A DNA stretch of 64,000 nt, taken from the NCBI GenBank assembly GCA_051294905.1, contig CM119376.1, positions 12,586,001 to 12,650,000 on the forward strand, given 5' to 3'. Origin of the DNA: Botryllus schlosseri (taxonomy: Eukaryota). Shown piece by piece: positions 6,620 through 61,244 of the stretch. The notes below the pieces were generated by a model that was not told the DNA's origin, did no database searches, and saw only the letters and a list, made by a program, of their open reading frames with translations. Within the stretch, counting starts at the first letter, position 1. Every line of letters begins with the position of its first letter. Both the position numbers and the translations under genes were made by a program.

Positions 6620-9600
6620 TCACATGAGCACGCTCTCGAATCTCGCCCCCTTTCTAATTGAGATATCGCTGAAGCTCTGAGACTGGTGCAACAGGCACGC
6701 CTCTTGCTTGGCCAGCACCAGGAGGGAATAGAATTTGGAGGCGGCTTGCTTTTTCGTGACTCCCTCCGTCATTTGGAAGTAGGAAAGCTCCTGCACGTGC
6801 TTGAACGATCTCTGCATATGAAAATTACATTGGGTTACGCCAGACAACTCCATTACCAGTTCGCTACCGTGAATATACACATATATAGCGTGCTCTGGAT
6901 GCCGAGCTACAACTAACCGAAGATTTGAGGCTCCCTCAGTGGGAGAAAAAGTTTAGAGATATATTTCTCATTACCAATACCCTACCCTTGCGCTAAAGGC
7001 AATAGTAGGCTACCACTTCATTAACAATATATATATACTAAGACACTCACATTAAACGTGTGAATCAGTTGCTGTGTTCTCTTATTCCACCGTAAGTCGT
7101 CCACGTCTTCGGCATAAGACTCGCTCTCTTCGATTTCTGAAAAGCGTATTTAATACATAAGCAGTCACTACTTCACAGAAATGTCATTGCCGCGAATGGC
7201 AAAGAGCCAAATAGCGGAAGTAACCAGCATTGCTACTCAAGTAGAAGTAGAAGTACCACCATACGTACAAGCCAAGTACAAGTAGCAATTTTCAAGACAA
7301 ATCAAAACTACATCGAATGGGAGTAGAATATGAAAGACCTGAAAATCAAAACTACTCTAGTAGTTTCATAAAGTTGATTTTGTCGAGGGTCGCTAGAAAA
7401 ATATCTACCTTGTTCAGGTTCTTGAACATCCTCCAGCGGTGGTATCCCCGATACGTCGCTGAGACCGAGGTTTTCCAGGGCTGATTCTTGATCCGGGGCT
7501 TTCGGCGGGCTCGGGGGCGGCATCATCCCGCCAGGACTCGAGCCGGGACTGGGAGGGCCGACGCTGTACGGCTCGTAATCGTCGTTGTCCGAATTGTAAG
7601 CGGCCTAAATCAACAAACTGTCTCGTTACCCGGCATGTCGGCAATGATTGGGAGTTGTCGTCAGTTGCAGTCAGTAGCGAAGTACTACTGGTTTTTCCGA
7701 GAACTCAAGTAGCTTTTGCTCATCTTTCTCTAATTACTCTAGGGGTTATATTTATAGACAGTTTCCACTTCTACCCGAGATTTTAAAAGTAGAAAGTAAA
7801 GTAAGTAAAGTAAAAGTAGAAAGTAGAATACGGAAAGTATTACATGACAATTGGGCGAAAGAGCCCTTGAATCACGATGATAACCGGTCATATTTTCGAA
7901 TATTGCACCTATTTGTAGTGGCATTTTGTGTTGGTCAAAGTGGTCACTTCTAATCAACTGCAAAAGTATGAGACACATCGATCGAAATATACTTCTTTTT
8001 GAACTAAATACGCGCGCAATTTTCAGATCTTCATTTCCTTCTTCTATGCTAAGTAGTTTTGACATGTCTTGAAAATCAGTAAAACATCTACTGAACTAGA
8101 AGCAATGTCGACTATTACGTTATTATATTGTCGCATACGTCGACAGTTACAGCTCTTAAAACTGGTTCTACAGAACTAAACAACAACTGTAATTTTCATC
8201 TATAACGCATTTCACGCTTGGAGAAAAGATCGTCATTCCTTCATCCCCTGAAACTTTAATTCAAACAGGCAATGGCCATGAATTCCTCCATATGAAAATT
8301 CTAGTGCAAAAAATTATCGAGACAACATATTTCGCATCTTTGGGAGAGGTCGTTCATTCTGTTATATCTGTGGCTAAAGTCAACCTTTTTCAAAATCCTT
8401 CAACCTAGAGCTTGTGTATGTATAATCTAAAACTGCATTTGAGTCTAAGGCATCTCTTCGCCTCAATTATTCGAATTGTTATGTCACTGACGGCATATTA
8501 GATGATACAACCGTTTTTGATTGCTTATTTCAATGCTAAGTTAATATAGCTTGAGCATCAAATGAAATTTCACACATTGTTCTCAGATATTGGTCATTGA
8601 ACTCGTCAATTGCTTCTAATTGTTAGAACCCGTTGGTGATAAAATTGTTACTATACAAAGTTCTTTCGTAATCTTGACCCGTTACTGACGATTACACCTG
8701 ATGAGCATCAGTCAAAACTATTTGCGTGTAACACAATATGAACACGTTATTTGATAGCACTAGAATAACCGCGTAGAAAACATACCGGCTGATGAAGGTC
8801 GACGTCGGAAATTTGCGGAACAAGGGTCGCGTCCAGTTGTTTGTTTTGAACCAAGCTCGATTCGTCCATGGCGGGGGGCGGAAAATTGTGCTCGGCCACG
8901 CTCAAATCACGAGCGGTATGCACGGACGACTCGTCGATCTCGCTAGGCGTCGGAGTCTGAAAACAAATCGGAAACAGATCACAAACGCAGATGATACGCC
9001 GTCTCGCATTCGACGCTACCTCGTCCAGTAAGCCGAACCGCTGATTCAGTTGCGTGGCGGACAGATCCTTGAGACTCTCCGGTATCTCGCAATGCAGGTT
9101 AGCGACAAACGCCTGGGAATAAACAAAGCCTGTCATGTCTAGATCCTAACTAGTATCGAATTTTTGAGGTGATACCCATAACTATCCCCGTCACCAATAA
9201 CCCCGGCTTCTTCAGTAAATGTTCAAAACATATAGCTTAGGGAGCATTTTTAAAACTTCAGAGCATCTATTTGAGCCACTTCACAGCCATCGCTATGCTT
9301 GGACATGAAATAAACTCTTCTGTTGCAATTACTCCAAACCCCTCCAGAGCACCTACGCAAAGCACACATTTCAAAGTATCTATCAACTCATCTACCCCCA
9401 CCTTGTTGAGCATGGGAGCGTAAATGCCGGTCGGTCCCGAGAACAGCTTATCCACACCGCCAATTTCCTTCCACTGCATCAGACGTTTCGTGGGCGGCGC
9501 CATGTCAAGCGAGGTGACGATATCCTCAAAGTTCTTCAACTGCTCGCGCATCGTCTGTCCGTCCAGTTCGATGACCGGGTCCACGATGAGCTTTCTCTTT

Positions 9601-30692: not shown

Positions 30693-33600
30693 TCACGTGG
30701 CAGTCCGCGCATTACAGTTAACAGGGACGACGCTTTCCCCTACAATTTGTTGCGAAGCGCGTCCGTTTCCTAAATCCGTACCGGGGTTCGTATCGTGATT
30801 CTGTACCGTGATTTCGATCAAATCGCATACGCACAGTTCAATGTCGCGATTGGCATCGTCACCTATAGAAAACGCGTGCGAACCAGAGGAAACGCGCGCG
30901 TCAGATGAGACGCACGCATCATCGCCTATCGCCGGCTGCAATGAAAACGCGTCTGATGAAACACAAGCGTCCGAGGAAACGCACGCGTCGCCCTCTATGG
31001 TAGGCTGTGATGAAGACGCGTCGGATGAAACACAAGGTTCGCTGCCTATCACGGGCTGTAATGAAGACGCCTGCGTAACGGATGGGATGTTGGACGAAAC
31101 GCATGCATCGGATGAAACGCACGCGTCTGAATCAAAGCCTTCCACGCTGATTTTTCCAAAGGATATTATATTGTCATTGTGGTCGCTACCGGTAGCAGGC
31201 GATATCGCACCAGGCGACGATGCGTTATTCGCGCCGTTACGTTCAGGCTCGCTGAGCACGACCCGCATAACCAACCCGTCCGAGTCGCCGTCGTCCGGCA
31301 AGCTCGTATCAGTAACGGAGATAGCGACGGGCGACGTGACCGATTCGCACTCACTCGCCGCTTTGCTTATAGTCCGAATCGCGATCGGGGCGCGATTCTC
31401 GGCGAGTCCGTCGCGCAAATTGCCGACGCTGCTGCGATCGCTTTTGACCGCGACCGACGCGTCGCAACGAGCCGCCAAATCGGGCGTGGAGTGCGCGTGC
31501 GACAATTCGCACGCCAAAAAGCCGGGATTACGACGGTCTGAATACGGCGACGGAGGGGCAATCGGGGGTTTTCCCGCGCCGGGCGCGAAACCGCGTCCAG
31601 TCGATTTTCGCGACAGCAACCGCGCGGATATCGATTTCGCGGTTTGCGGCGAAGTAGTAAGGCTCTTGCTTCTCTGGCATTTGTTTCTCTCTTTCTCCAA
31701 AGTGTCGATTTTCACAGGTGATGCGACCTTGGCCTTATTATCGCCTTTACCAAGGCTGAAATGCCTCGAAATCGACTTTCTCCTCAAGCTGCTACGTAGC
31801 GACGAGGCAGTTCCCTTATCAAGATCCAGCCTCAACCCTTCCTGTGTCTTTTCAGCGGTTTTCTTGCACAAATCCGCGCTTTTGGTCGAAGACCCCGACA
31901 AATTACGCGTCACAGACGCAGAACTAGCCGATTTCAGCCCATGCACCGTCTGGCTGCGCGTGCGCCGCCACGAAGTCACGTCCTCGGACGTTACGGACGC
32001 GTCGTCGTCTAATGATTCGTCGATGGTTGAGCTCTTGTCGGACGAGCTGGCTGCGCTTCCGTTGCTTTTATCGGACGACGATCTGTTCACGGACTTATTG
32101 CTAGTTTTCCGTCGCCCGTTGTCGTGCGCGGACCGACGCTTGCCGTGCGCGGGCGGTTCGAACCGGTCGACGGCCGCCGCGTCCGGGTATTTGGCGCGGT
32201 ATTTTGCGAGCGCGTCTTGGATGGAGTTGATCCACTGTTTCTTGTCGTGCTCTTCGGAAGCCTGCAGCGTGTAGGCCACGTTTAGCTCCTCGCAGCGTAC
32301 GCGGAAGGAATGTTTCACTGCAAAATAACGAAGACGCGTCAGTTGGGCTTCGCGCGAAGAGCCGTTCAATGACGGAAACATTTATACTTTCGCAGAGTAG
32401 TCAAGTAGGTTTCGTCCGTTTGTGCTACCCACTCAACTTGAAGTACTTACATACACTACCTGTACTTGGATTTTTTGACAAAACTAGCCCTAGAATACTC
32501 TATTATTTACTGGAAAATCGCTACTTATACCGACCCGACCAAATGCTAGAGATCTGCATGGGTTTGAATTTGAAAAAATAATCCCATTCGAAAGCGGCTT
32601 TTCGAATCATTTCCGATTACCAAATAGAATTTCGCGCGGATTCTAGTACACTCATAGCGGAAGGACTGTATTTCCACCCGTGAACCACCTGATATACGGG
32701 CGTGAATACACAGTTACACACCCATGATACACGAAGCCTGAGCGTACCTCAAGACGTATACCGCGGTATAAATCGAGGATACGATTTTAATCCAAATTAT
32801 GCATGTACGTACGTAGGATTCACGACCGAGATATAATGTCCTTGATTGGTGAGTAGTCCGAGAATTATCAACGAAAAACCCAAATAACTCCGCTTCTACT
32901 AGTTGGAATTGAGTCAAATTAGTTTAGCATCGTTCATCAAGACTACTCAACAATTTCATGGGGTTGACGGAAAAATTCGAATTCTTGTTTTAATTTTTCT
33001 TAATAAATTGAAAGTTTGGCTCTGCAGCGGCTTCTACGGGTAACCTGACAATGTGATCAGTGAATGGCTGGAATCTGAAAAAAAGTTATTTTTGAACAAC
33101 CCGAGTACAGTGTACAGTACACAGTGTACACGCCAAACAAGGCTAGAACTACGCCTAAAATCGTTAAGCTTACATGCCAGCGACTCCAAATACCTACGTC
33201 CCACATAGATTTTTTAGAAGTACTAAATCTACACCCCGCCTAGGAAAGCGCAAACAAAAGCCACCATACCTTTGTCGGAGCTCAATATCCCGCCTCTAAA
33301 CGAGCCGCTCAGCTTCTCGCCCTCGTTCACGTCGACCGCCAGCGACCGCAGGGGCAACGGATGCCTGTAAACTTGGTACGAGACTTTGTTGCTGCGCGTG
33401 GTTTGCCGCGTCAGGACCAGCGCTTCCTCGAACAGGAACACGTGCATTTTCTGAACGGAAAATCAGCGGGGATTAGAAAAGGCTCGGCGCGTTTTCAAAG
33501 CTAAAACACACAGCCGAATCATACAATCTCATATAATTGGAGCGGGGCCTACGATAAGTTGGGCCCCGATTGGAGGTATACAACTTCAATTGATATTAAA

Positions 33601-36600
33601 ATAAGCCGTATGTTTTCGGCTGGCACTCGCCAGGGGAAATCATCAGCGACTAGCAGAGTACTGTGTATATTAACGGTATAGCATTACCTAATATGACGTC
33701 ATATTATTCGAAATCTCGCGACCGCGCTTTGAATGTACAACAGACCCGTATTACCCACTATGTGCGGCGTCATGAAAAACAAACCAATCGATTCAGTAGT
33801 GCATTCAATTTCGTCACAGTCACATATGCATTCATAACACACTCGTATATTCACTTCATGCGTAGCAGAATTGATCAAGACGACCTTCGAGACGACGCCG
33901 ACAAAAAAACTGAATAATTTACAGCGTACCGACTTCGTTCTATTACATCAGTCGGCCGACACCTGCTCAACAATGCAGGTGCGCGTTAAACAGTCGCACG
34001 CGGTACGCAAAATATCCGAACACGTCACCGCATTCCCAAGTCGACAATTGCGCTGTTACGTCACACGCGGGAAATGAGCGACGCGGGACTTGTCCAGATC
34101 CGTTCCACGGGTGAGAATGCGATTTGGCCTAGATACCATGATACCAATATCATCCATCGCAAGAGTTCTGTTGTTAGAACCTAGTTTCGTGGAAGTACGT
34201 TGTCGTAGTTGCCTTACGCGCTGCTATTATTATAACGTGAATTTCCAAATTGGATTAGGATTGCTGAATTCGCGAAAACTTGGGAATGTAATTAAATTAG
34301 AGTTCATTTTCATAAGCATGAGAATGGCAGAAGTCTGCAGAGCAAGCTATGCTCGTTTCGCAATACACAGTTCTCCTGTAGAATATTGAGAAAAAAACAC
34401 AAATTAGATTAGAATTAAAATTAGAGCATAGAAACATTTCCACAAATTGAATTAGATTTCGCTCGAATTACTCTTAAACAAATAGAACAATCTCGTTGTC
34501 CAAGTGCGGTTTGTTGTTGTCGTTGGTACAATCCCGAGTTTCCTGGTTCGTCATACTACTTGTGACGTCATACTTTCCGTAATGGTTTTAATTTCGATTC
34601 TGTTTGAATCCGTTTCGCGTGCCGATAAGTATCGATGAGAAGCCCCCCTGAACAGTATTCGCGTTATCGTAAATGAAGTGTTGAATATAGCTTTCATTAC
34701 ATCTACTACAACACTATATTTATGATAACTCGGATGCCGTTGTGTACAGCACATCTACCGCAAGGTATGTATGTACCACGAGCTATTTAAGAGTCGATAT
34801 TAGATCTCCTAATCCGTGCCATTCATCAACGCGGGTGCCCTTTTTCCGTTCTCAGCCGAACGCATCAAGCCAGATACGTTCAATTTAGAAAAGCTCGCAA
34901 CGGGACGCATTACCACCGACTTCAACACAAACAAAGACCGCGAACCGCATTCGCATTCTCTCCCACCGGGATCACAAAATCGGGCGGGCGTATGTCGCAG
35001 GGGGCCGTAACTGTCCAGCAATCGATTCCGACATATGGGTCGCCGGCCGATCAGCACGCAAATCCGTCGGCTATTTAGCGAAATTGGCGAGATTAAGATC
35101 TCTTAATGGCGTCGACACTTCCAATACAAAGCGTCGGGCGCCGGCGACATCTGGACGACGCGATTTTCATAGGGCGTGATTTGATAGAAGCGATGTTGAC
35201 AGATTAGGTTCCGTGTCCGAGGCCGTTAGCGCTAAATCGAAAATCATCCGAGACACATCGGGCGTTTTCATCAAAAACGCGTTACGCCAAGGGAACGCTT
35301 CCCCGATAGAAAAAGAAAAAAAACACGAAAAATCTAATCGACATATAACGCCGGTTCAAATGTCAATGGCGATGCTCAAACAAAAAAATAATCTAGCGCT
35401 GACAGAGGTCGCCAGTAACGAAGTACTTTACTTTTCTGAGTGCTCAACTAAGTTTTAACTACAAGTGGTTGTGGTTTTACACTAGTTCCGCTTCTACCTG
35501 AGCAGTTTTTAGGCGATTTACTTAACTTTTTGGATTTCGAACAGTACATTCATATTGCAATGAACCCGATTATTTTCGGCCGACACTTGTCCGTGGTAAT
35601 CATCAACAACTAGTACAGAAATGGAAAGAACATTGAACATCAACCATCGTATCACAAGATATGACGTCGCCGGCACGAAATTTCGAATAAGCTCAAAATG
35701 CACTATTTTTAGATGGTACACGATCTCTTTCTGTAGGCTACTCCACTAGTTGCTGACGATCACCCCTGACGAGTGTCAGCCGAAAATATTCGGGTTCGTC
35801 TCAATATGAATATACTATTACGCGAAGTTCTGCACCTCAAAGAAGCACTTTGGACCTTGATAAGCCGAGATTAGTTTTGGTAGATTGCATTCCTTTCACG
35901 AGTAAAATTGTCGTGATTGCCGCACGAAAGATCTTGCCCACTTGCAGCACTTACTTAACTGGTTGCAATTTAGTTAGACTGCTACCACTTCTACTCAACA
36001 GTTTTGCGTGTTTCAGCTAAACTAGGCCCCCAACACTTACAGTTTCATATACCAGGAATTCATTAATTCTATTTCTACACGAGTAACAACATAGATAGGA
36101 AGCGTACAGTTGTAAGGCATCACGGATGTTTCGACGCCGGTCGAGGTACCGAGGATTATTTCTGCATCGTCTGATGCGAAATCATATCAAATACGAATAC
36201 TCCTCTTACCGTTCCCCTGTTGTTCTTCAGCTGCCCCGAGCAGAGCATCAAGCGACTATTTTCCACGAAAGGCGACTTTTGCTTCTCGTCGAGGTATTCC
36301 AGCTTGGATCGGATGTAGCGGCACTGCTGCTCGCCGGTCGTCTCGTCCACTTTCTCGATAATGTTACCGATGATCTCCATCTGAAAATTTAAAATGGAAT
36401 CATTTGATGGTATCGTATCAGAGTTAGAACTCGAGTGTGAGTGCCGCAACTCAGAATGGTACACTACACTATGGACAATGAACTGGCTACGACACGGCGG
36501 CCCATGTATGCTGGGTAGATAGGTCACGGAATACGCGTACGCCTGCGATATGGGTATATCGCTTCCAAATTCTCATTGGGGCAATGCCGCTGGCCAAGCC

Positions 36601-45600: not shown

Positions 45601-48600
45601 AGCGTTAGTTCGAACATGGAATGTTGTACATTTGTTTGAAAAGTTAACGAGAATAGAACAGGACGTTCTAGCTAGAACTTTAATGCTCTAAGAGGCCAAG
45701 AAAGACATAGCGGGCAAACACGAAAAAATCAATGGCACACGCTTTCCACTGTCCATAAGAGTGAGCAGCAAGTTCACAACGACAATCCGGTCTACAAACG
45801 GCTAATTACGAACGTTAAGAACATCTATTGCGATCTTCAAAGCAGACTTGGACAACAAGATAAGTCTAGTAGTGTAACCAGACTAATTAGGGCGAAACGC
45901 AGGTAATTTAATTCCCATCTCATATGTGAAATGCTCTAATTTTAGTTTTAATCTAATTTTTGGTTTTCCTCAGAATACTGCAGGAGAACAGTGCAGTGCG
46001 AAACGAGACGAGCTTGCTGTAAAGACACTTGCTCTTCTCACGCTTATGGGAATGAGCTCTGATGATATTATCTCGATTAGATTTCCAATTTTTCGCGAAT
46101 TCAGTAATTTTAATTCTGATCCAATATGAAAAAAACGAGTAGCTACAATTCTAATTCTGATCTAATTCAGAAAAGCTGCAAATTTTCTAGTTGTCCAAGC
46201 AAGTCTGCTCCAAAGATACGAGTAAATATGAGCGTCGCTACCTATGATTGGAAGTATTGAAACGTCCGCGGCAACTGGTAAATCGCCAGCCAATCACTCA
46301 TAAAAAATCCATGTATAACGTAAATAACTTCGGGACACAATAAATATCCTCTAGCTGTGATACGTTTCAGCAACCATTTCGCACAGGGATGTTAACAGGT
46401 ATATTACGTACCCTTAAAACATCTGAAGGCATATACGCCATACGCAATGCATCAATACTAGACTTGCAAGCGCATTGACATGTCCTTACAATTACAGGTT
46501 CAATTGATCAAGACAACACTTGTCGAGGCGTTAACCACTGATTTGTTACGAAAGAAGTGATAATTCCAGCACTTAACTGACCAGGGGCCATTAATGGCTG
46601 ACAGCGCGCTATCACAGAGCAGCCGACAGTGAACTTTCAAATAAATTTATCAGGAACATCAGTCATATTGAATCACTATCATTCAGCGTTAAGCTTACGC
46701 TGAGTGACATCTCGGTCAACAAAAGTTGAGAAAACAAAAATAAATTGAAGTGATCAATATCATAGATGACGTGGACATCGCCAACGCACCGCACAAAAGA
46801 GTCCGCTACGACGTAACAAGATTACGAATAGCGTGCAGAAAAGTGCGCGAAAGCATCAACATTCGGAAATTACAAATAATGATATTACCTGCAGCTTGCC
46901 TTTCTGGTTTGGCTTCCCAGGAGATATGAGGTTGGCCAACGACACAACAGACTTTCGAATGGCCTTCGCCCTTTTAGAACTGGGCTCCTGCAACAAAAAG
47001 CGGGCGATCGCATAAACTTCAAAAGCGGGGAAACGGCGATTTCGGTCGGAGCAGAGGAGTCCGCTGGGATTCAAAATAGAAAACCGTTTATTCGTCCCTT
47101 TGCTCCGATGGGAGATGCTTTTAACCAAATAAGCCCAAAGTCAAAGCCAAAACGCACCTGTTAAGATTCTTACTACATTATTTTCATTATCTCGAGCTAA
47201 CTGCACGAATGATGGAACAAGGTCGTAGCGATAGCGCTTGATGCGACAGATAACAAATATCCTATGGACTCCCTGAACAAAACGATATATATAGCGAACT
47301 ACAGTAGTGTACTGTACATACAATAATGTCTATCGCAATAGCACTGCGTTCAGCAACAAGCATGTCACTGGTGGTAAATTTATTTTCTATTTAGAAACGA
47401 TGCATGTCCATTGTCCATTGGCCATGGCATGTCATATTTTGCCATAATTTTACATCGAACATCCATAGAAGGGGAACATCGAACACTACGGGATGCGTAC
47501 CTGTTTCACAGGCACCCGGCACAATTCACGGTCCTACAGTAGAGATTCGCAATTTTCCGAAGTTCGCATTATATTGCGTCATTCTTACAGTGTCTATTAA
47601 TACGCCAGCATACTGTTTCAGATCAAAGTCCGTGACAGAAACCACCACATCATTCGTTATGTAACTCGTTTATGAGGCGAATAAAGAACATACGTTCCCC
47701 AGCGCCGCCAAATGTAATCGATATACACAGAGTGTATTTCCTCAAAAGTTACAGAGAATCGGCGGTTTATGACGAATTGATCGGTGACCGACTACTTCAT
47801 TGTGATGTGACAAACTGAATCGAACCAGCCGATTTTTCATGAATCAAATCCCTTAATATTAAATATACTTCCTGGTTGGCGGACAATGTCCTCAGTGGGG
47901 TGTACAGACAGCCAAACCTGCCGCTGAGATATTTGAATAAAACCTAGGTGGGTGGCCTTTTCAACCAGCTAAATTATGTGCCACATCCCATGCTAAAAGT
48001 ACAGTGTCCTGCTGCAGGTCAGTAAAGCGAAACAGTGCCTGTATTTCAATAAATAATCTCGAAATACAACTTGGCAAGTCCACTGGCCACCACACTGTAC
48101 GGTGTACGTGTACAGCGTACGCGTACGTACGTCGTACAGTCGTACATAAAAATTTATATCGACAGGCGAATCCCTATTGCGATGATGAGGTAATTACGAA
48201 AACAAGCCAATGCACAAAACTGATTCCCGTACGATTGTTGATATACAATGCTCTTTATAATTCTCTACTAGTTGCTGACGATTACCCCTGACGAGTGTCA
48301 GCCGAAAATATTTGGGTTCATTTCAATATAAATATACCATTGTATTATTGAAGTTATGTACCTCCAAGAAACTCTTCAAAACTGATACACCACGGCAAAC
48401 ATTACACCCTCAGCCAGTGGTACTGGACGGCTAACGGACAAGGCCACAGGCTACACTCGTCAGAATCAGTTGGCTCTAACCTACTAGAATATTATCGTCC
48501 AAATTAGCGGCTGGAATAAACAAGAAACGAAGCGTTGAAACCTACAATTGTAAAGCACTTCTATCCCATGAAACATCCTCTCCAACACTGTCGCTACATA

Positions 48601-59500: not shown

Positions 59501-61134
59501 ATCGCCGTTCCAGCGACACAGCTGTTGACATTCGGATCAGCGATTTGCTTTATCTACAATCGTGTGTGTGTGTTAATTTCTAATTAGTTTGCACTGCTGC
59601 GTTATGAGTTCCATCTAATCGGATATTAGGATCCTACCTGTGTCTCGGCAAATATCCGACACTGCCCATCATTTCTTAGTACCGTATTGAATATTCCCAG
59701 CATATCTACGCAGGATATCAAACATCAGCAATCATGTCTACGGTCTAACAAGTTACATCAAATCAACTAACAATACAAGCTCCCTGGAGCGGGCGTACAT
59801 CCGAAAGTTGCGCACCGAATCTCGCGACAGATCATCAATATCAAGAGGAGTCTTTCCTGCGACATCCGGTGCCGAGACATGAAAGCAGTACAATAGGCGG
59901 AAACCGGCTATATAATTTCATACTGCCATGACACATACCGAGGAGGTTAATAAACGCAGGCGCCAGATAAATGCCAACAGCAAGTGTCAGTTAACGGATG
60001 CCAAACCAACCGCAAGTGACTATACGATACTACAACGTAGGTTACAATATAACAGAAACTAGCTCTCCAAAATCTACGTCGAATAGAAATGCATAAGATA
60101 AAAAAAAATGCAGGATGATAAGAAATAAACAATATGTATGGGATAATAATCAATGAGTTCACATTAACGACTACAGTTATTTTGATGTTGAACAGAACAG
60201 GTCAACTGCGTGTGCAGATCTAGCAAATAGCAAATAATGGCCATCCAGTTAAGCTAATCAATCAATAGTTCGTTACTTAAGTTACCCGCACGGCGCCTTT
60301 ACAGCATGACTTACAAGCGAACCCTCACTCAACATCCTTATAACCTATCCGACAACGCGCCACACAGTATCAACGAGTGGTAAAACAATAAACACCTACT
60401 TCTGCGTTGCTACATAGACAAGTTATGCTGTCTGAAAACGTACGCCACATTAATTTACATATAGACGACTCGTCTTGAAACTAGCAGCTTATTCAAATAC
60501 AGCGTTACGGCGACAACACTAATTGTATATTACCAAGAATTAACGTTCAAAGAGCTATAGTTACAGGTCATGTACGTGATAACTACGGCTTGTCGGCATG
60601 ATGTCGGTTACCCCTATATGCGTAACCGCTGAAAAATTTATATACATTTCCAGATCATGTCGCAAAACACAAAATATCTGACTCTCTACTGACAAACGCA
60701 GTTCAAGCATGTGTCCTGCCACTAACCAGTAACCAGTAACTGCACAAAGCCGCTACCTACAACAACTCAACATCGATGTAATATGAATCACCGCTGCGTT
60801 ATCCCCTATTATATATTCGCAATGGTTAACTTTTCACCGCAGCTACGTCCTTCCTGTTACACATGCGAACATCCAGCACCGCGCTTCGGGGTCGTGCTAA
60901 CGCGACGGCGCCCTGCTCACGAGTGAGGTGCGGAAGCCTGGAGGCTATGCGATCGAGAGACGATTTAATTGAGGTCGTCTCTCTCGCATGAGTAGAGACG
61001 GCCTGTATTCGGTGTAGGCATAGATCAGCGCCACGGGTTATGCTCTCTCACCTTTCGAGCAGATATGGAAGCGAGTCTACTCGACAATGCCGCACACGGT
61101 TAACATGTATCAGTGAAAAAATGTGTGCCAAATG

Positions 61135-61189
61135 ACGAGTGTCAGCCGAAAATATTCGGGTTCATTTCAATATGAATATACTATTTAAT
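61135..61189 (+). mobile_element. 5'-truncated hammerhead-family fragment with 11-bp flanking direct repeat
   Basis: (TG)ACGAGTGTCAGCCGAAAATATTCGGGTTCATTTCAATATGAATATACTATT between TGTGCCAAATG copies (61124-34, 61190-200). Confidence 0.75.
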
Positions 61190-61244
61190 TGTGCCAAATG
61201 TCTTCAACGAGTCTAAAACCCCGTGTGGAAATGTGTGTTATGAT

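What the first reader, a model, noticed from the sequence alone, without database searches (positions are those of the whole stretch)
35746..35800. Hammerhead ribozyme with a built-in decoy: loop II pairs with either the catalytic core or an upstream duplicate of the core
Seen: the copy reads GCTGACG-AT-C-ACCC-CTGACGA-G-TGTCAGC-C-GAAA-ATAT-T-C-GGGT. The catalytic CTGACGA occurs twice (35753-59 and 35766-72). Loop II (35774-80) can fold back on the real core as CTGAC-GAGT-GTCAG, which would be inactive. It can instead pair over 7 bp with the upstream GCTGACG, forming a pseudoknot that frees the core. Established: minimal type I hammerheads with a very short stem II and palindromic stem III (here AATATT) are associated with Penelope-like retroelements and cleave as dimers. 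Inference: this family encodes a conformational ON/OFF switch, or a pseudoknot replacing the usual loop I-loop II contact. I do not recognise this arrangement from described minimal hammerheads.
Basis: partly seen in the sequence, partly recalled or inferred. Interest (0 to 1): 0.85.

Follow-up and report, generated by a model that had tools for sequence, protein, structure and literature searches.

The report
Penelope retroelement hammerhead with pseudoknot
This is the small self-cleaving "hammerhead" RNA motif carried in the tail of a dead, truncated Penelope-like jumping gene; its unusual point is that its second helix is made by pairing with a short box just upstream (a pseudoknot), while the proposed on/off "decoy" switch is not supported.

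Summary
The sequence is as described. Window 35752-35795 holds a complete type I minimal hammerhead: stem I ACCC/GGGU, core CUGACGA, G10.1-C11.1 closing a 7-nt loop II, GAA, palindrome AAUAUU and C17 at 35791. A second CUGACGA lies 13 nt upstream.

It sits in a 110-nt, 5'-truncated tail of a Penelope-like retroelement (RT plus GIY-YIG). An inverted truncated copy abuts it. The host genome has over 1,600 candidate copies and full-length tandem units of about 2.7 kb.

The upstream box pairs with loop II over 7 bp. This pairing is kept in at least five sequence-distinct forms in related elements from this and other assemblies:
- GCUGACG/UGUCAGC
- UCUGACG/UGUCAGA
- UCCGACG/UGUCGGA
- UGACGCG/UGCGUCA
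- CGUGCC/GGCACG
- a 5-bp GCAUU/AAUGC form in one more distant lineage

The pseudoknot is therefore real and selected. It marks one Penelope subgroup, separated from hairpin-helix-II relatives by a 100/100 branch.

The loop II:core "OFF" hairpin is not conserved. N7 varies freely, and the hairpin is absent from three lineages. It loses by 3-5 kcal/mol, with equilibrium share at or below 0.005.

Pseudoknot contacts are already known in other hammerheads (Perreault 2011). They are not described for Penelope hammerheads in the papers I could read. Other agents of this scan reached the same reading on other copies of this genome. I rate it a new variant of a known kind, of moderate interest.

The parts
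35741..35850 (+). 5'-truncated tail (pseudo-LTR fragment) of a Penelope-like retroelement. It matches unit positions 2664-2781 of a full-length tandem copy (L156) at 85% identity.
35752..35758 (+). 5' box GCUGACG, the 5' strand of the pseudoknot.
35762..35765 (+). Stem I, 5' strand ACCC. The linker from the box is AUC, 35759-35761.
35766..35772 (+). Catalytic core box C3-A9 (CUGACGA).
35773..35781 (+). G10.1 (35773) and C11.1 (35781) close the 7-nt loop II UGUCAGC (35774-35780). Loop II is the 3' strand of the pseudoknot.
35782..35791 (+). G12 A13 A14 (35782-35784), palindromic helix III AAUAUU (35785-35790) and C17 (35791). The predicted cleavage is 3' of 35791.
35792..35795 (+). Stem I, 3' strand GGGU.
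35806..35808 (+). Remnant of the element's start codon ATG, 14 nt after the cleavage site. In full-length copies the ~860-aa frame starts here.
35540..35734 (-). Inverted, decayed, 5'-truncated partner copy (83% identity), abutting the + copy head to head. Its hammerhead lies at 35562-35607 and has core mutations.
48230..48380 (+). Second tail copy (91% identity). Its motif at 48274-48319 is intact, with U17.
33589..33738 (-). Older decayed tail copy (71% identity). Its motif at 33602-33647 has core A6 changed to G.
8633..8755 (+). Older decayed copy (73% identity). Its motif at 8684-8729 has G12 changed to A.
61133..61192 (+). 60-nt fragment 100% identical to the unit. It begins inside the core and lacks the box and the stem I 5' strand.

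Best explanation
[quoted passage not shown] At this locus it survives in a dead, 5'-truncated tail insertion. In this PLE subgroup the usual hairpin helix II is reduced to the single G10.1-C11.1 pair closing a 7-nt loop. All of that loop pairs with a box 6-10 nt upstream of the core, just 5' of stem I. This H-type pseudoknot supplies a 6-8-bp helix II and ties its far end to the far end of stem I through a 1-4-nt linker. That does the job of the stem I/stem II tertiary contact (inferred from hammerhead geometry). The palindromic helix III implies that two copies pair to form the active double hammerhead (inferred from the literature). In full-length tandem units the motif lies about 105 nt after one ORF's stop and 14 nt before the next ORF's ATG. 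Cleavage would therefore trim the RNA to a short leader (inferred). That the box looks like the catalytic core is real and widely conserved, but it is not needed for the pseudoknot. The competing loop II:core hairpin is at most a weak, lineage-specific kinetic side product.
For: Sequence and core. PLE context: an RT YVDD plus GIY-YIG ORF ends about 100 nt upstream of the motif. Full-length tandem units of ~2.7 kb carry 856-860-aa frames, with the motif in each spacer. Head-to-head truncated copies occur in the window. Same architecture in relatives at 43-67% aa identity from other assemblies and metagenome contigs. Compensatory forms of the box:loop II helix: G-C or U-A at the outer pair; U-A changed to C-G at pair 3 (L038, L160); G.U changed to A-U (L064); a shifted helix UGACGCG/UGCGUCA (L043, L161); a wholly different CGUGCC/GGCACG (L159); GCAUU/AAUGC (L048). 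Per-lineage shuffle p is 0.0006-0.04, and the distance from box to core is a constant 6-10 nt. On a model-fitted alignment of 38 distinct motifs, 93.4% of pseudoknot cells pair against 88.2 +/- 1.0 shuffled (0 of 500 shuffles as high) and 19-51% when slid. For the whole structure the figures are 90.3% against 82.9%, with covariation score 0.168 against 0.079. The helix alone is worth -6 to -9 kcal/mol in all lineages and has p >= 0.99 at equilibrium. On the protein tree, pseudoknot-type and hairpin-type elements are split by a 100/100 branch. Precedent: pseudoknots joining stems I and II are needed for fast cleavage in many hammerheads, including one with a 1-bp stem II (PMC3088659).
Against: No cleavage data exist for this motif. 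In bulk RNA-seq, depth runs on across the predicted site (214 against 181) and no pile-up of read ends is seen. Those reads come almost wholly from solo copies inside other transcripts, on both strands, and the ORF body is unexpressed. PLE hammerheads cleave poorly in vitro, and one needs its protein (PMC4209133, PMC11167929). Most type A motifs have U3.G8 instead of C3-G8, which may lower activity. The model-fitted alignment leans towards the structure and placed L043 by sequence rather than by pairing. The strongest covariation (L043, L159, L048) rests on my own register assignment. Full pairing of a 7-nt loop closed by one base pair is sterically tight, and no 3D model was made. Pairing does not explain why the box keeps the exact core sequence.
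Confidence: 0.72

Rival explanations
1. Decoy switch. Loop II alternates between an OFF hairpin with the real core and an ON pairing with the core look-alike box. This would gate self-cleavage co-transcriptionally or through a bound factor.
For: In this genome's families 1 and 2, N7 = C gives a 5-bp OFF hairpin of -5.4 kcal/mol. In the full monomer, the nested MFE of the commonest form combines it with a CCGAA/UUCGG hairpin at -10.5 kcal/mol. The box is a perfect CUGACGA in most lineages, even where the real core has drifted. Its last A is not needed for pairing. Two decayed window copies keep core:loop II complementarity rather than box:loop II. The local hairpin would form first during transcription (inference).
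Against: N7 varies (A 22, C 8, G 3, U 1) without any change at loop position 2. The OFF hairpin is -0.5 to -3.5 kcal/mol in most lineages and absent in L043, L159 and L048, where the pseudoknot persists. At equilibrium the OFF form has p <= 0.005 in every lineage, including the window copy. C3-A6 are fixed by catalysis, so complementarity to them cannot show covariation. The two decayed copies are anecdotal; about 60 other copies show nothing similar.
Confidence: 0.12
2. The motif is a hammerhead-derived structured RNA that no longer cleaves. The pseudoknotted fold would instead serve as a recognition or positioning element for the element's RT/EN protein or for translation start.
For: No read ends are seen at the site. 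The U3.G8 core occurs in 20 of 34 distinct motifs. PLE hammerheads show low or protein-dependent activity, and catalytic mutants did not affect insertion in vitro (PMC4209133, PMC11167929). The motif sits 14 nt before the ATG.
Against: All other core positions, G10.1-C11.1, H17 and the palindromic helix III are kept across lineages at 43-67% protein identity. C3-G8 / U3-A8 covariation is present. That pattern is what selection for catalysis predicts.
Confidence: 0.1
3. The box is conserved for a DNA-level reason, such as a promoter or initiator-proximal element (TGACG is a CRE half-site), or is a relic of a local duplication of the core. Its match to loop II would then be incidental.
For: A full CRE palindrome TGACGTCA lies about 75 nt upstream in this genome's families 1-3. 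In type A elements, CCAAT and TATA-like boxes precede an initiator-like TCATTC just before the box. The box sequence is more constant than the real core.
Against: When the box does change, loop II changes with it (L038/L160, L043/L161, L159, L048, L064). A DNA-only constraint would not produce this.
Confidence: 0.06

Closest known systems
Minimal type I hammerheads of Penelope-like elements (Cervera & de la Pena 2014, PMC4209133; Lunse, Weinberg & Breaker 2017, not readable here)
   Same: They share the location in the pseudo-LTR of an RT + GIY-YIG element. They also share a type I topology, a short open stem I, G10.1-C11.1 and a 4-10-nt palindromic helix III implying dimers. Both occur as thousands of dispersed truncated copies, in tandem and in inverted arrangements.
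   Different: The described motifs have a hairpin helix II of 6-8 bp with an extra nucleotide after A9. Reviews describe them as lacking tertiary stem I/II contacts (PMC6155905, PMC7761336). Here helix II is 1 bp and its loop pairs with a 5' box. The more distant PLEs I fetched (31-37% aa identity) do have the described hairpin form.
Pseudoknot-stabilised hammerheads (Perreault et al. 2011, PMC3088659)
   Same: A Watson-Crick helix of 4-7 bp links the stem I side to the stem II side and replaces loop-loop contacts. One tested example has a 1-bp stem II and a 6-bp pseudoknot that is essential for speed.
   Different: The tested cases are mostly bacterial or phage type II motifs (loop I with the 3' tail), plus a few type I/III and a human intronic one. 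None is a dimer-dependent PLE motif. None is reported with a pseudoknot strand that copies the catalytic box.
Non-circularly permuted hammerheads, types SGC/CSG/GCS (Eckert et al. 2023, PMC10085705)
   Same: The core helices are built through pseudoknots, and a ~3-nt linker joins one side of stem I directly to one side of stem II.
   Different: There the three conserved blocks are reordered. Here the block order is the ordinary type I order (CUGANGA, GAAA, cleavage site), and only the 5' strand of helix II has moved upstream.

Membership tests
Hammerhead ribozyme, type I | Conserved core: C3 U4 G5 A6 N7 G8 A9, G12 A13 A14, A15.1-U16.1, H17 | tested here: met
   All positions are canonical at 35766-35772, 35782-35785, 35790 and 35791. 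They are kept in relatives, with C3-G8, U3-A8 or U3.G8.
Hammerhead ribozyme, type I | Stems I and III flank the core and are supported by covariation | tested here: met
   In stem I, 4 of 6 pairs change on both sides and 85% of cells pair. The helix III palindrome varies as GC/UA at its centre and 91% of cells pair.
Hammerhead ribozyme, type I | Hairpin stem II between A9 and G12 | tested here: not met
   Only G10.1-C11.1 is present (92% paired). The 7 loop nucleotides cannot pair among themselves.
Hammerhead ribozyme, type I | Match to the Rfam hammerhead covariance models | tested here: not met
   No hit at gathering score in the window. No hammerhead hit at E up to 10 in 35600-35950.
Hammerhead ribozyme, type I | Site-specific self-cleavage 3' of H17 | tested here: inconclusive
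   RNA-seq shows no pile-up of read ends and continuous depth across the site. The reads are from solo copies in other transcripts.
Penelope-like-element minimal hammerhead | Lies in the pseudo-LTR of an element encoding RT plus GIY-YIG endonuclease | tested here: met
   An ORF with YVDD and GIY-YIG lies upstream (Pfam RVT_1 and GIY-YIG below their cut-offs; homologues carry PF00078, PF26215 and PF01541). Tandem 2.7-kb units occur.
Penelope-like-element minimal hammerhead | Very short palindromic helix III (dimer-dependent) | tested here: met
   The forms are AAUAUU, AAGCUU, AAAGCUUU, AAAAGCUUUU, AAGUUCUU and AACUUGUU.
Penelope-like-element minimal hammerhead | Extra nucleotide after A9 and a 6-8-bp hairpin helix II; no tertiary contact | tested here: not met
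   Helix II is replaced by a 1-bp stem plus a pseudoknot. The hairpin form is seen only in the more distant PLEs.
Pseudoknot-stabilised hammerhead (Perreault 2011) | Watson-Crick helix of 4 bp or more joining the stem I side to the stem II side, supported by covariation | tested here: met
   Helices are 5-7 bp in at least five sequence-distinct forms at constant spacing.
Pseudoknot-stabilised hammerhead (Perreault 2011) | The pseudoknot is required for fast cleavage | not testable with these tools
   This needs cleavage assays with deletion and compensatory mutants.
Conformational-switch (bistable) ribozyme | Two mutually exclusive folds of comparable stability | tested here: not met
   Box:loop II has p >= 0.99 and core:loop II p <= 0.005. 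The difference is 3.4-4.8 kcal/mol in the window family. This is a nearest-neighbour model only.
Conformational-switch (bistable) ribozyme | Both alternative pairings are conserved | tested here: not met
   The OFF hairpin's variable pair (N7:loop position 2) does not covary. The OFF hairpin is absent in L043, L159 and L048.

The most novel reading that the evidence does not exclude
The 5' box is kept as an exact copy of the catalytic box because it really does act as a decoy. During transcription loop II would first trap the true core in a local hairpin. The box, or the element's protein acting on it, would then strip loop II away. Cleavage would so be timed to a later step, such as dimer formation or RNP assembly. 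That would make it a natural hammerhead with a built-in strand-displacement switch.
Probability: 0.12. Interest if true: 0.75.

Novelty: new variant of a known kind. Interest (0 to 1): 0.5.

Why it matters
Penelope-like elements are widespread in animals, and the role of their hammerheads is still unclear. These motifs are described as minimal, without tertiary contacts and barely active in vitro.

A whole PLE subgroup whose hammerhead needs a box outside the textbook motif has two consequences. Descriptor and Rfam searches miss it. Constructs cut at stem I would wrongly look dead.

It also offers a compact natural design: a 1-bp stem II plus a 7-bp pseudoknot with a 1-4-nt tether. The motif sits 14 nt before the start codon, which links ribozyme processing to the start of translation and can be tested. 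The locus in the window itself is a dead insertion with no expected function.

Tried and rejected
- **Rfam:** the gathering-score and permissive scans found no hammerhead.
- **Upstream CUGACGA as the true core:** rejected. Nothing 5' of it pairs with the sequence after C17. Its helix II would be separated from the core by a 6 x 2 internal loop. Stem I covariation fits the downstream core.
- **Non-circular permutation (SGC/CSG/GCS):** rejected, because the block order is the normal type I order (PMC10085705).
- **Local tandem duplication as a full explanation:** only the heptamer is shared between the two 13-nt periods.
- **MAFFT and covariance-model alignments:** both placed L043 by sequence, 2 nt out of the pairing register. 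The tool counts therefore understate covariation. L159 fell below the E cut-off. I assigned registers in a script instead.
- **The 8684 copy:** its 'compensatory' changes belong to a unique decayed copy, not to a subfamily.
- **RNA-seq:** gave no ends at the cleavage site, but the element body was not expressed, so this says little.
- **Literature gaps:** Lunse et al. 2017 and the supplements of Cervera 2014 are not held. A full-text search for the loop sequence together with 'hammerhead' found nothing.

Full report
**Observation.** Window 35752-35795 reads GCTGACGA TC ACCC CTGACGA G TGTCAGC C GAA AATATT C GGGT. This is a complete type I hammerhead.
- Stem I is ACCC/GGGU.
- The core C3-A9 is CUGACGA (35766-35772).
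- G10.1 (35773) and C11.1 (35781) close a 7-nt loop.
- G12 A13 A14 follow, then the palindromic helix III AAUAUU and C17 at 35791.
- The heptamer CTGACGA recurs at 35753-35759.
- Loop II can pair with the real core (5 bp) or with GCUGACG at 35752-35758 (7 bp, one G.U).

The 44-mer is not expected by chance and recurs at 48274. Rfam reports no hammerhead at any threshold.

**What it belongs to.** The genome is a 495-Mb eukaryote assembly with more than 1,600 candidate copies of the surrounding ~110-nt repeat.
- The copies are 3' tails of 5'-truncated elements. Coverage falls off towards the 5' side, and an ORF with RT YVDD and GIY-YIG motifs ends about 100 nt before the motif.
- Full-length copies form head-to-tail arrays of ~2.7-kb units with 856-860-aa open frames.
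- In each spacer the motif lies ~105 nt after one ORF's stop and 14 nt before the next ATG. A CRE palindrome lies ~75 nt upstream.
- The finding's copy spans 35741-35850 at 85% identity to a unit. It abuts an inverted, decayed partner at 35540-35734.
- Further copies lie at 48230-48380, 33589-33738, 8633-8755 and 61133-61192.

This is the known complex tandem/inverted insertion pattern of Penelope-like elements (PMC8557442).

**The pseudoknot is conserved and covaries.** Relatives of the ORF at 43-67% identity were fetched without regard to the RNA, from ENA assemblies and metagenome contigs. They carry the same layout after the stop codon: box, 1-4-nt linker, stem I, core, G, 7-nt loop, C/U, GAA, palindrome, H, stem I.

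| Box / loop II | Where seen |
|---|---|
| GCUGACG / UGUCAGC | this genome, families 1 and 3 |
| GCUGAC / GUCAGC | this genome, family 2 |
| UCUGACG / UGUCAGA | many lineages (type A) |
| UCUGACA / UGUCAGA | L064 (G.U becomes A-U) |
| UCCGACG / UGUCGGA | L038, L160 |
| UGACGCG / UGCGUCA and UGACGC / GCGUCA | L043, L161 |
| CGUGCC / GGCACG | this genome, family 4 (L159) |
| GCAUU / AAUGC | L048 |

- The box ends 6-10 nt before the core in every case.
- Per-lineage shuffle p values are 0.0006-0.04.
- On a model-fitted alignment of 38 distinct motifs, 93.4% of pseudoknot cells pair. Shuffles give 88.2 +/- 1.0 (0 of 500 as high) and slid controls give 19-51%.
- With stems I and III and the 10.1-11.1 pair added, the figures are 90.3% against 82.9%, with covariation score 0.168 against 0.079.
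- Those counts understate the signal. L043 was aligned by sequence and L159 was not included.

More distant elements (31-37% identity) have the ordinary PLE motif instead: a bulged U, a 4-6-bp hairpin helix II and an ACGU or ACAUGU palindrome. On a protein tree, pseudoknot-type (12 rows) and hairpin-type (9 rows) elements are separated by a 100/100 branch. L064 was left out because only 137 aa were available.

**The switch is not conserved.**
- The OFF hairpin needs N7 = C for its fifth pair. Among 34 distinct intact motifs N7 is A 22, C 8, G 3 and U 1. Loop position 2 is G in 30 and its box partner is C in 32.
- The hairpin is worth -5.4 kcal/mol in the window family, -3.5 in L038, -3.0 in L032, -0.5 in type A and +0.5 in L043. 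It does not exist in L159 or L048.
- The box:loop II helix is worth -6 to -9 kcal/mol everywhere.
- In the 5' segment the box:loop II helix has p >= 0.99 and the OFF hairpin p <= 0.005 in all lineages.
- The 30-nt window segment folds into that helix at -10 kcal/mol, z = -3.0.

C3-A6 are fixed by catalysis, so complementarity of loop II to them cannot be tested by covariation. A transient kinetic OFF state in families with N7 = C is not excluded.

**Mechanism (inferred).** The loop closed by G10.1-C11.1 pairs fully with the 5' box. This gives a 6-8-bp helix stacked on that pair, in the manner of an H-type pseudoknot or a kissing loop. The short linker then holds the distal end of stem I beside it. 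Loop-loop contacts or pseudoknots do the same job in other hammerheads (PMC3088659). The palindromic helix III implies dimers (PMC4209133, PMC6765202). Cleavage would leave a 5'-OH RNA with a 14-nt leader before the ATG.

**Expression.** Bulk RNA-seq reads cover only the tail repeat, equally on both strands. Of these reads, 96% run on into unlike flanks. Depth is continuous over the site and no read ends accumulate there. The ORF body has no reads. This shows solo copies inside other transcripts that are not detectably cut. It says nothing about tandem units.

**What is known.** PLE hammerheads are described as minimal, dimeric and lacking tertiary contacts (PMC4209133, PMC6155905, PMC7761336). 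Pseudoknot contacts are well established in other hammerheads, including one with a 1-bp stem II (PMC3088659). Permuted hammerheads with pseudoknotted cores exist but differ in block order (PMC10085705). I found no description of a pseudoknot in PLE hammerheads, but I could not read Lunse et al. 2017. Notes from this scan show that other agents reached the same pseudoknot reading on other copies in this genome. I treated those as leads only.

**Unexplained.** The box stays a perfect CUGACGA even where the real core has drifted, and its last A is unpaired. Two decayed window copies keep core:loop II rather than box:loop II complementarity.

**Verdict.** The pseudoknot reading is supported and the decoy-switch reading is not. 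This is a new variant of a known kind, of moderate interest.

Noticed in passing
window 61133-61192: A 60-nt fragment is 100% identical to a full-length unit (L156 3317-3376). It begins at the second base of the hammerhead core and so lacks the box and the stem I 5' strand. It is either a very young or an oddly truncated insertion.
   Followed up: partly
window 8684-8729 and 33602-33647 (-): Two decayed copies carry paired changes that keep loop II complementary to the core rather than to the box: N7 C to U with loop G to A, and A6 to G with loop U to C. Both have lethal core mutations. About 60 other copies in the genome show nothing similar.
   Followed up: partly
L156 3210-3360; L157 2778-2960; L158 2611-2770: In full-length tandem units the spacer between ORFs is only ~110-140 nt. 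It holds a perfect CRE palindrome TGACGTCA ~75 nt before the hammerhead. The start codon lies 14 nt (L156) to about 10 nt after the cleavage site. Type A relatives have CCAAT and TATA-like boxes and an initiator-like TCATTC just before the box.
   Followed up: no
L035, L041, L051-L054, L071, L108 and others: Most type A motifs have a U3.G8 wobble in the core (20 of 34 distinct motifs). C3-G8 occurs in 10 and U3-A8 in 4. Whether U3.G8 motifs cleave is unknown.
   Followed up: no
L120, L123, L130-L132, L135-L137, L142, L143 (own genome): A common subfamily has the box ACUGACG with loop UGUCAGC (outer A.C mismatch). Rarer copies have UGUCAGU (A-U or G.U). The outermost pseudoknot pair is therefore loosely held in this genome.
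   Followed up: partly
window 35780-35794: CCGAA-AAUA-UUCGG can form a 5-bp hairpin that locks up G12-A14, C17 and the first stem I bases. This is a second inactive monomer fold, typical of dimer-dependent hammerheads.
   Followed up: partly
window 30693-32381 (-): A 562-aa ORF has only a weak PH-domain match, below the Pfam cut-off. It is unrelated to the finding.
   Followed up: no
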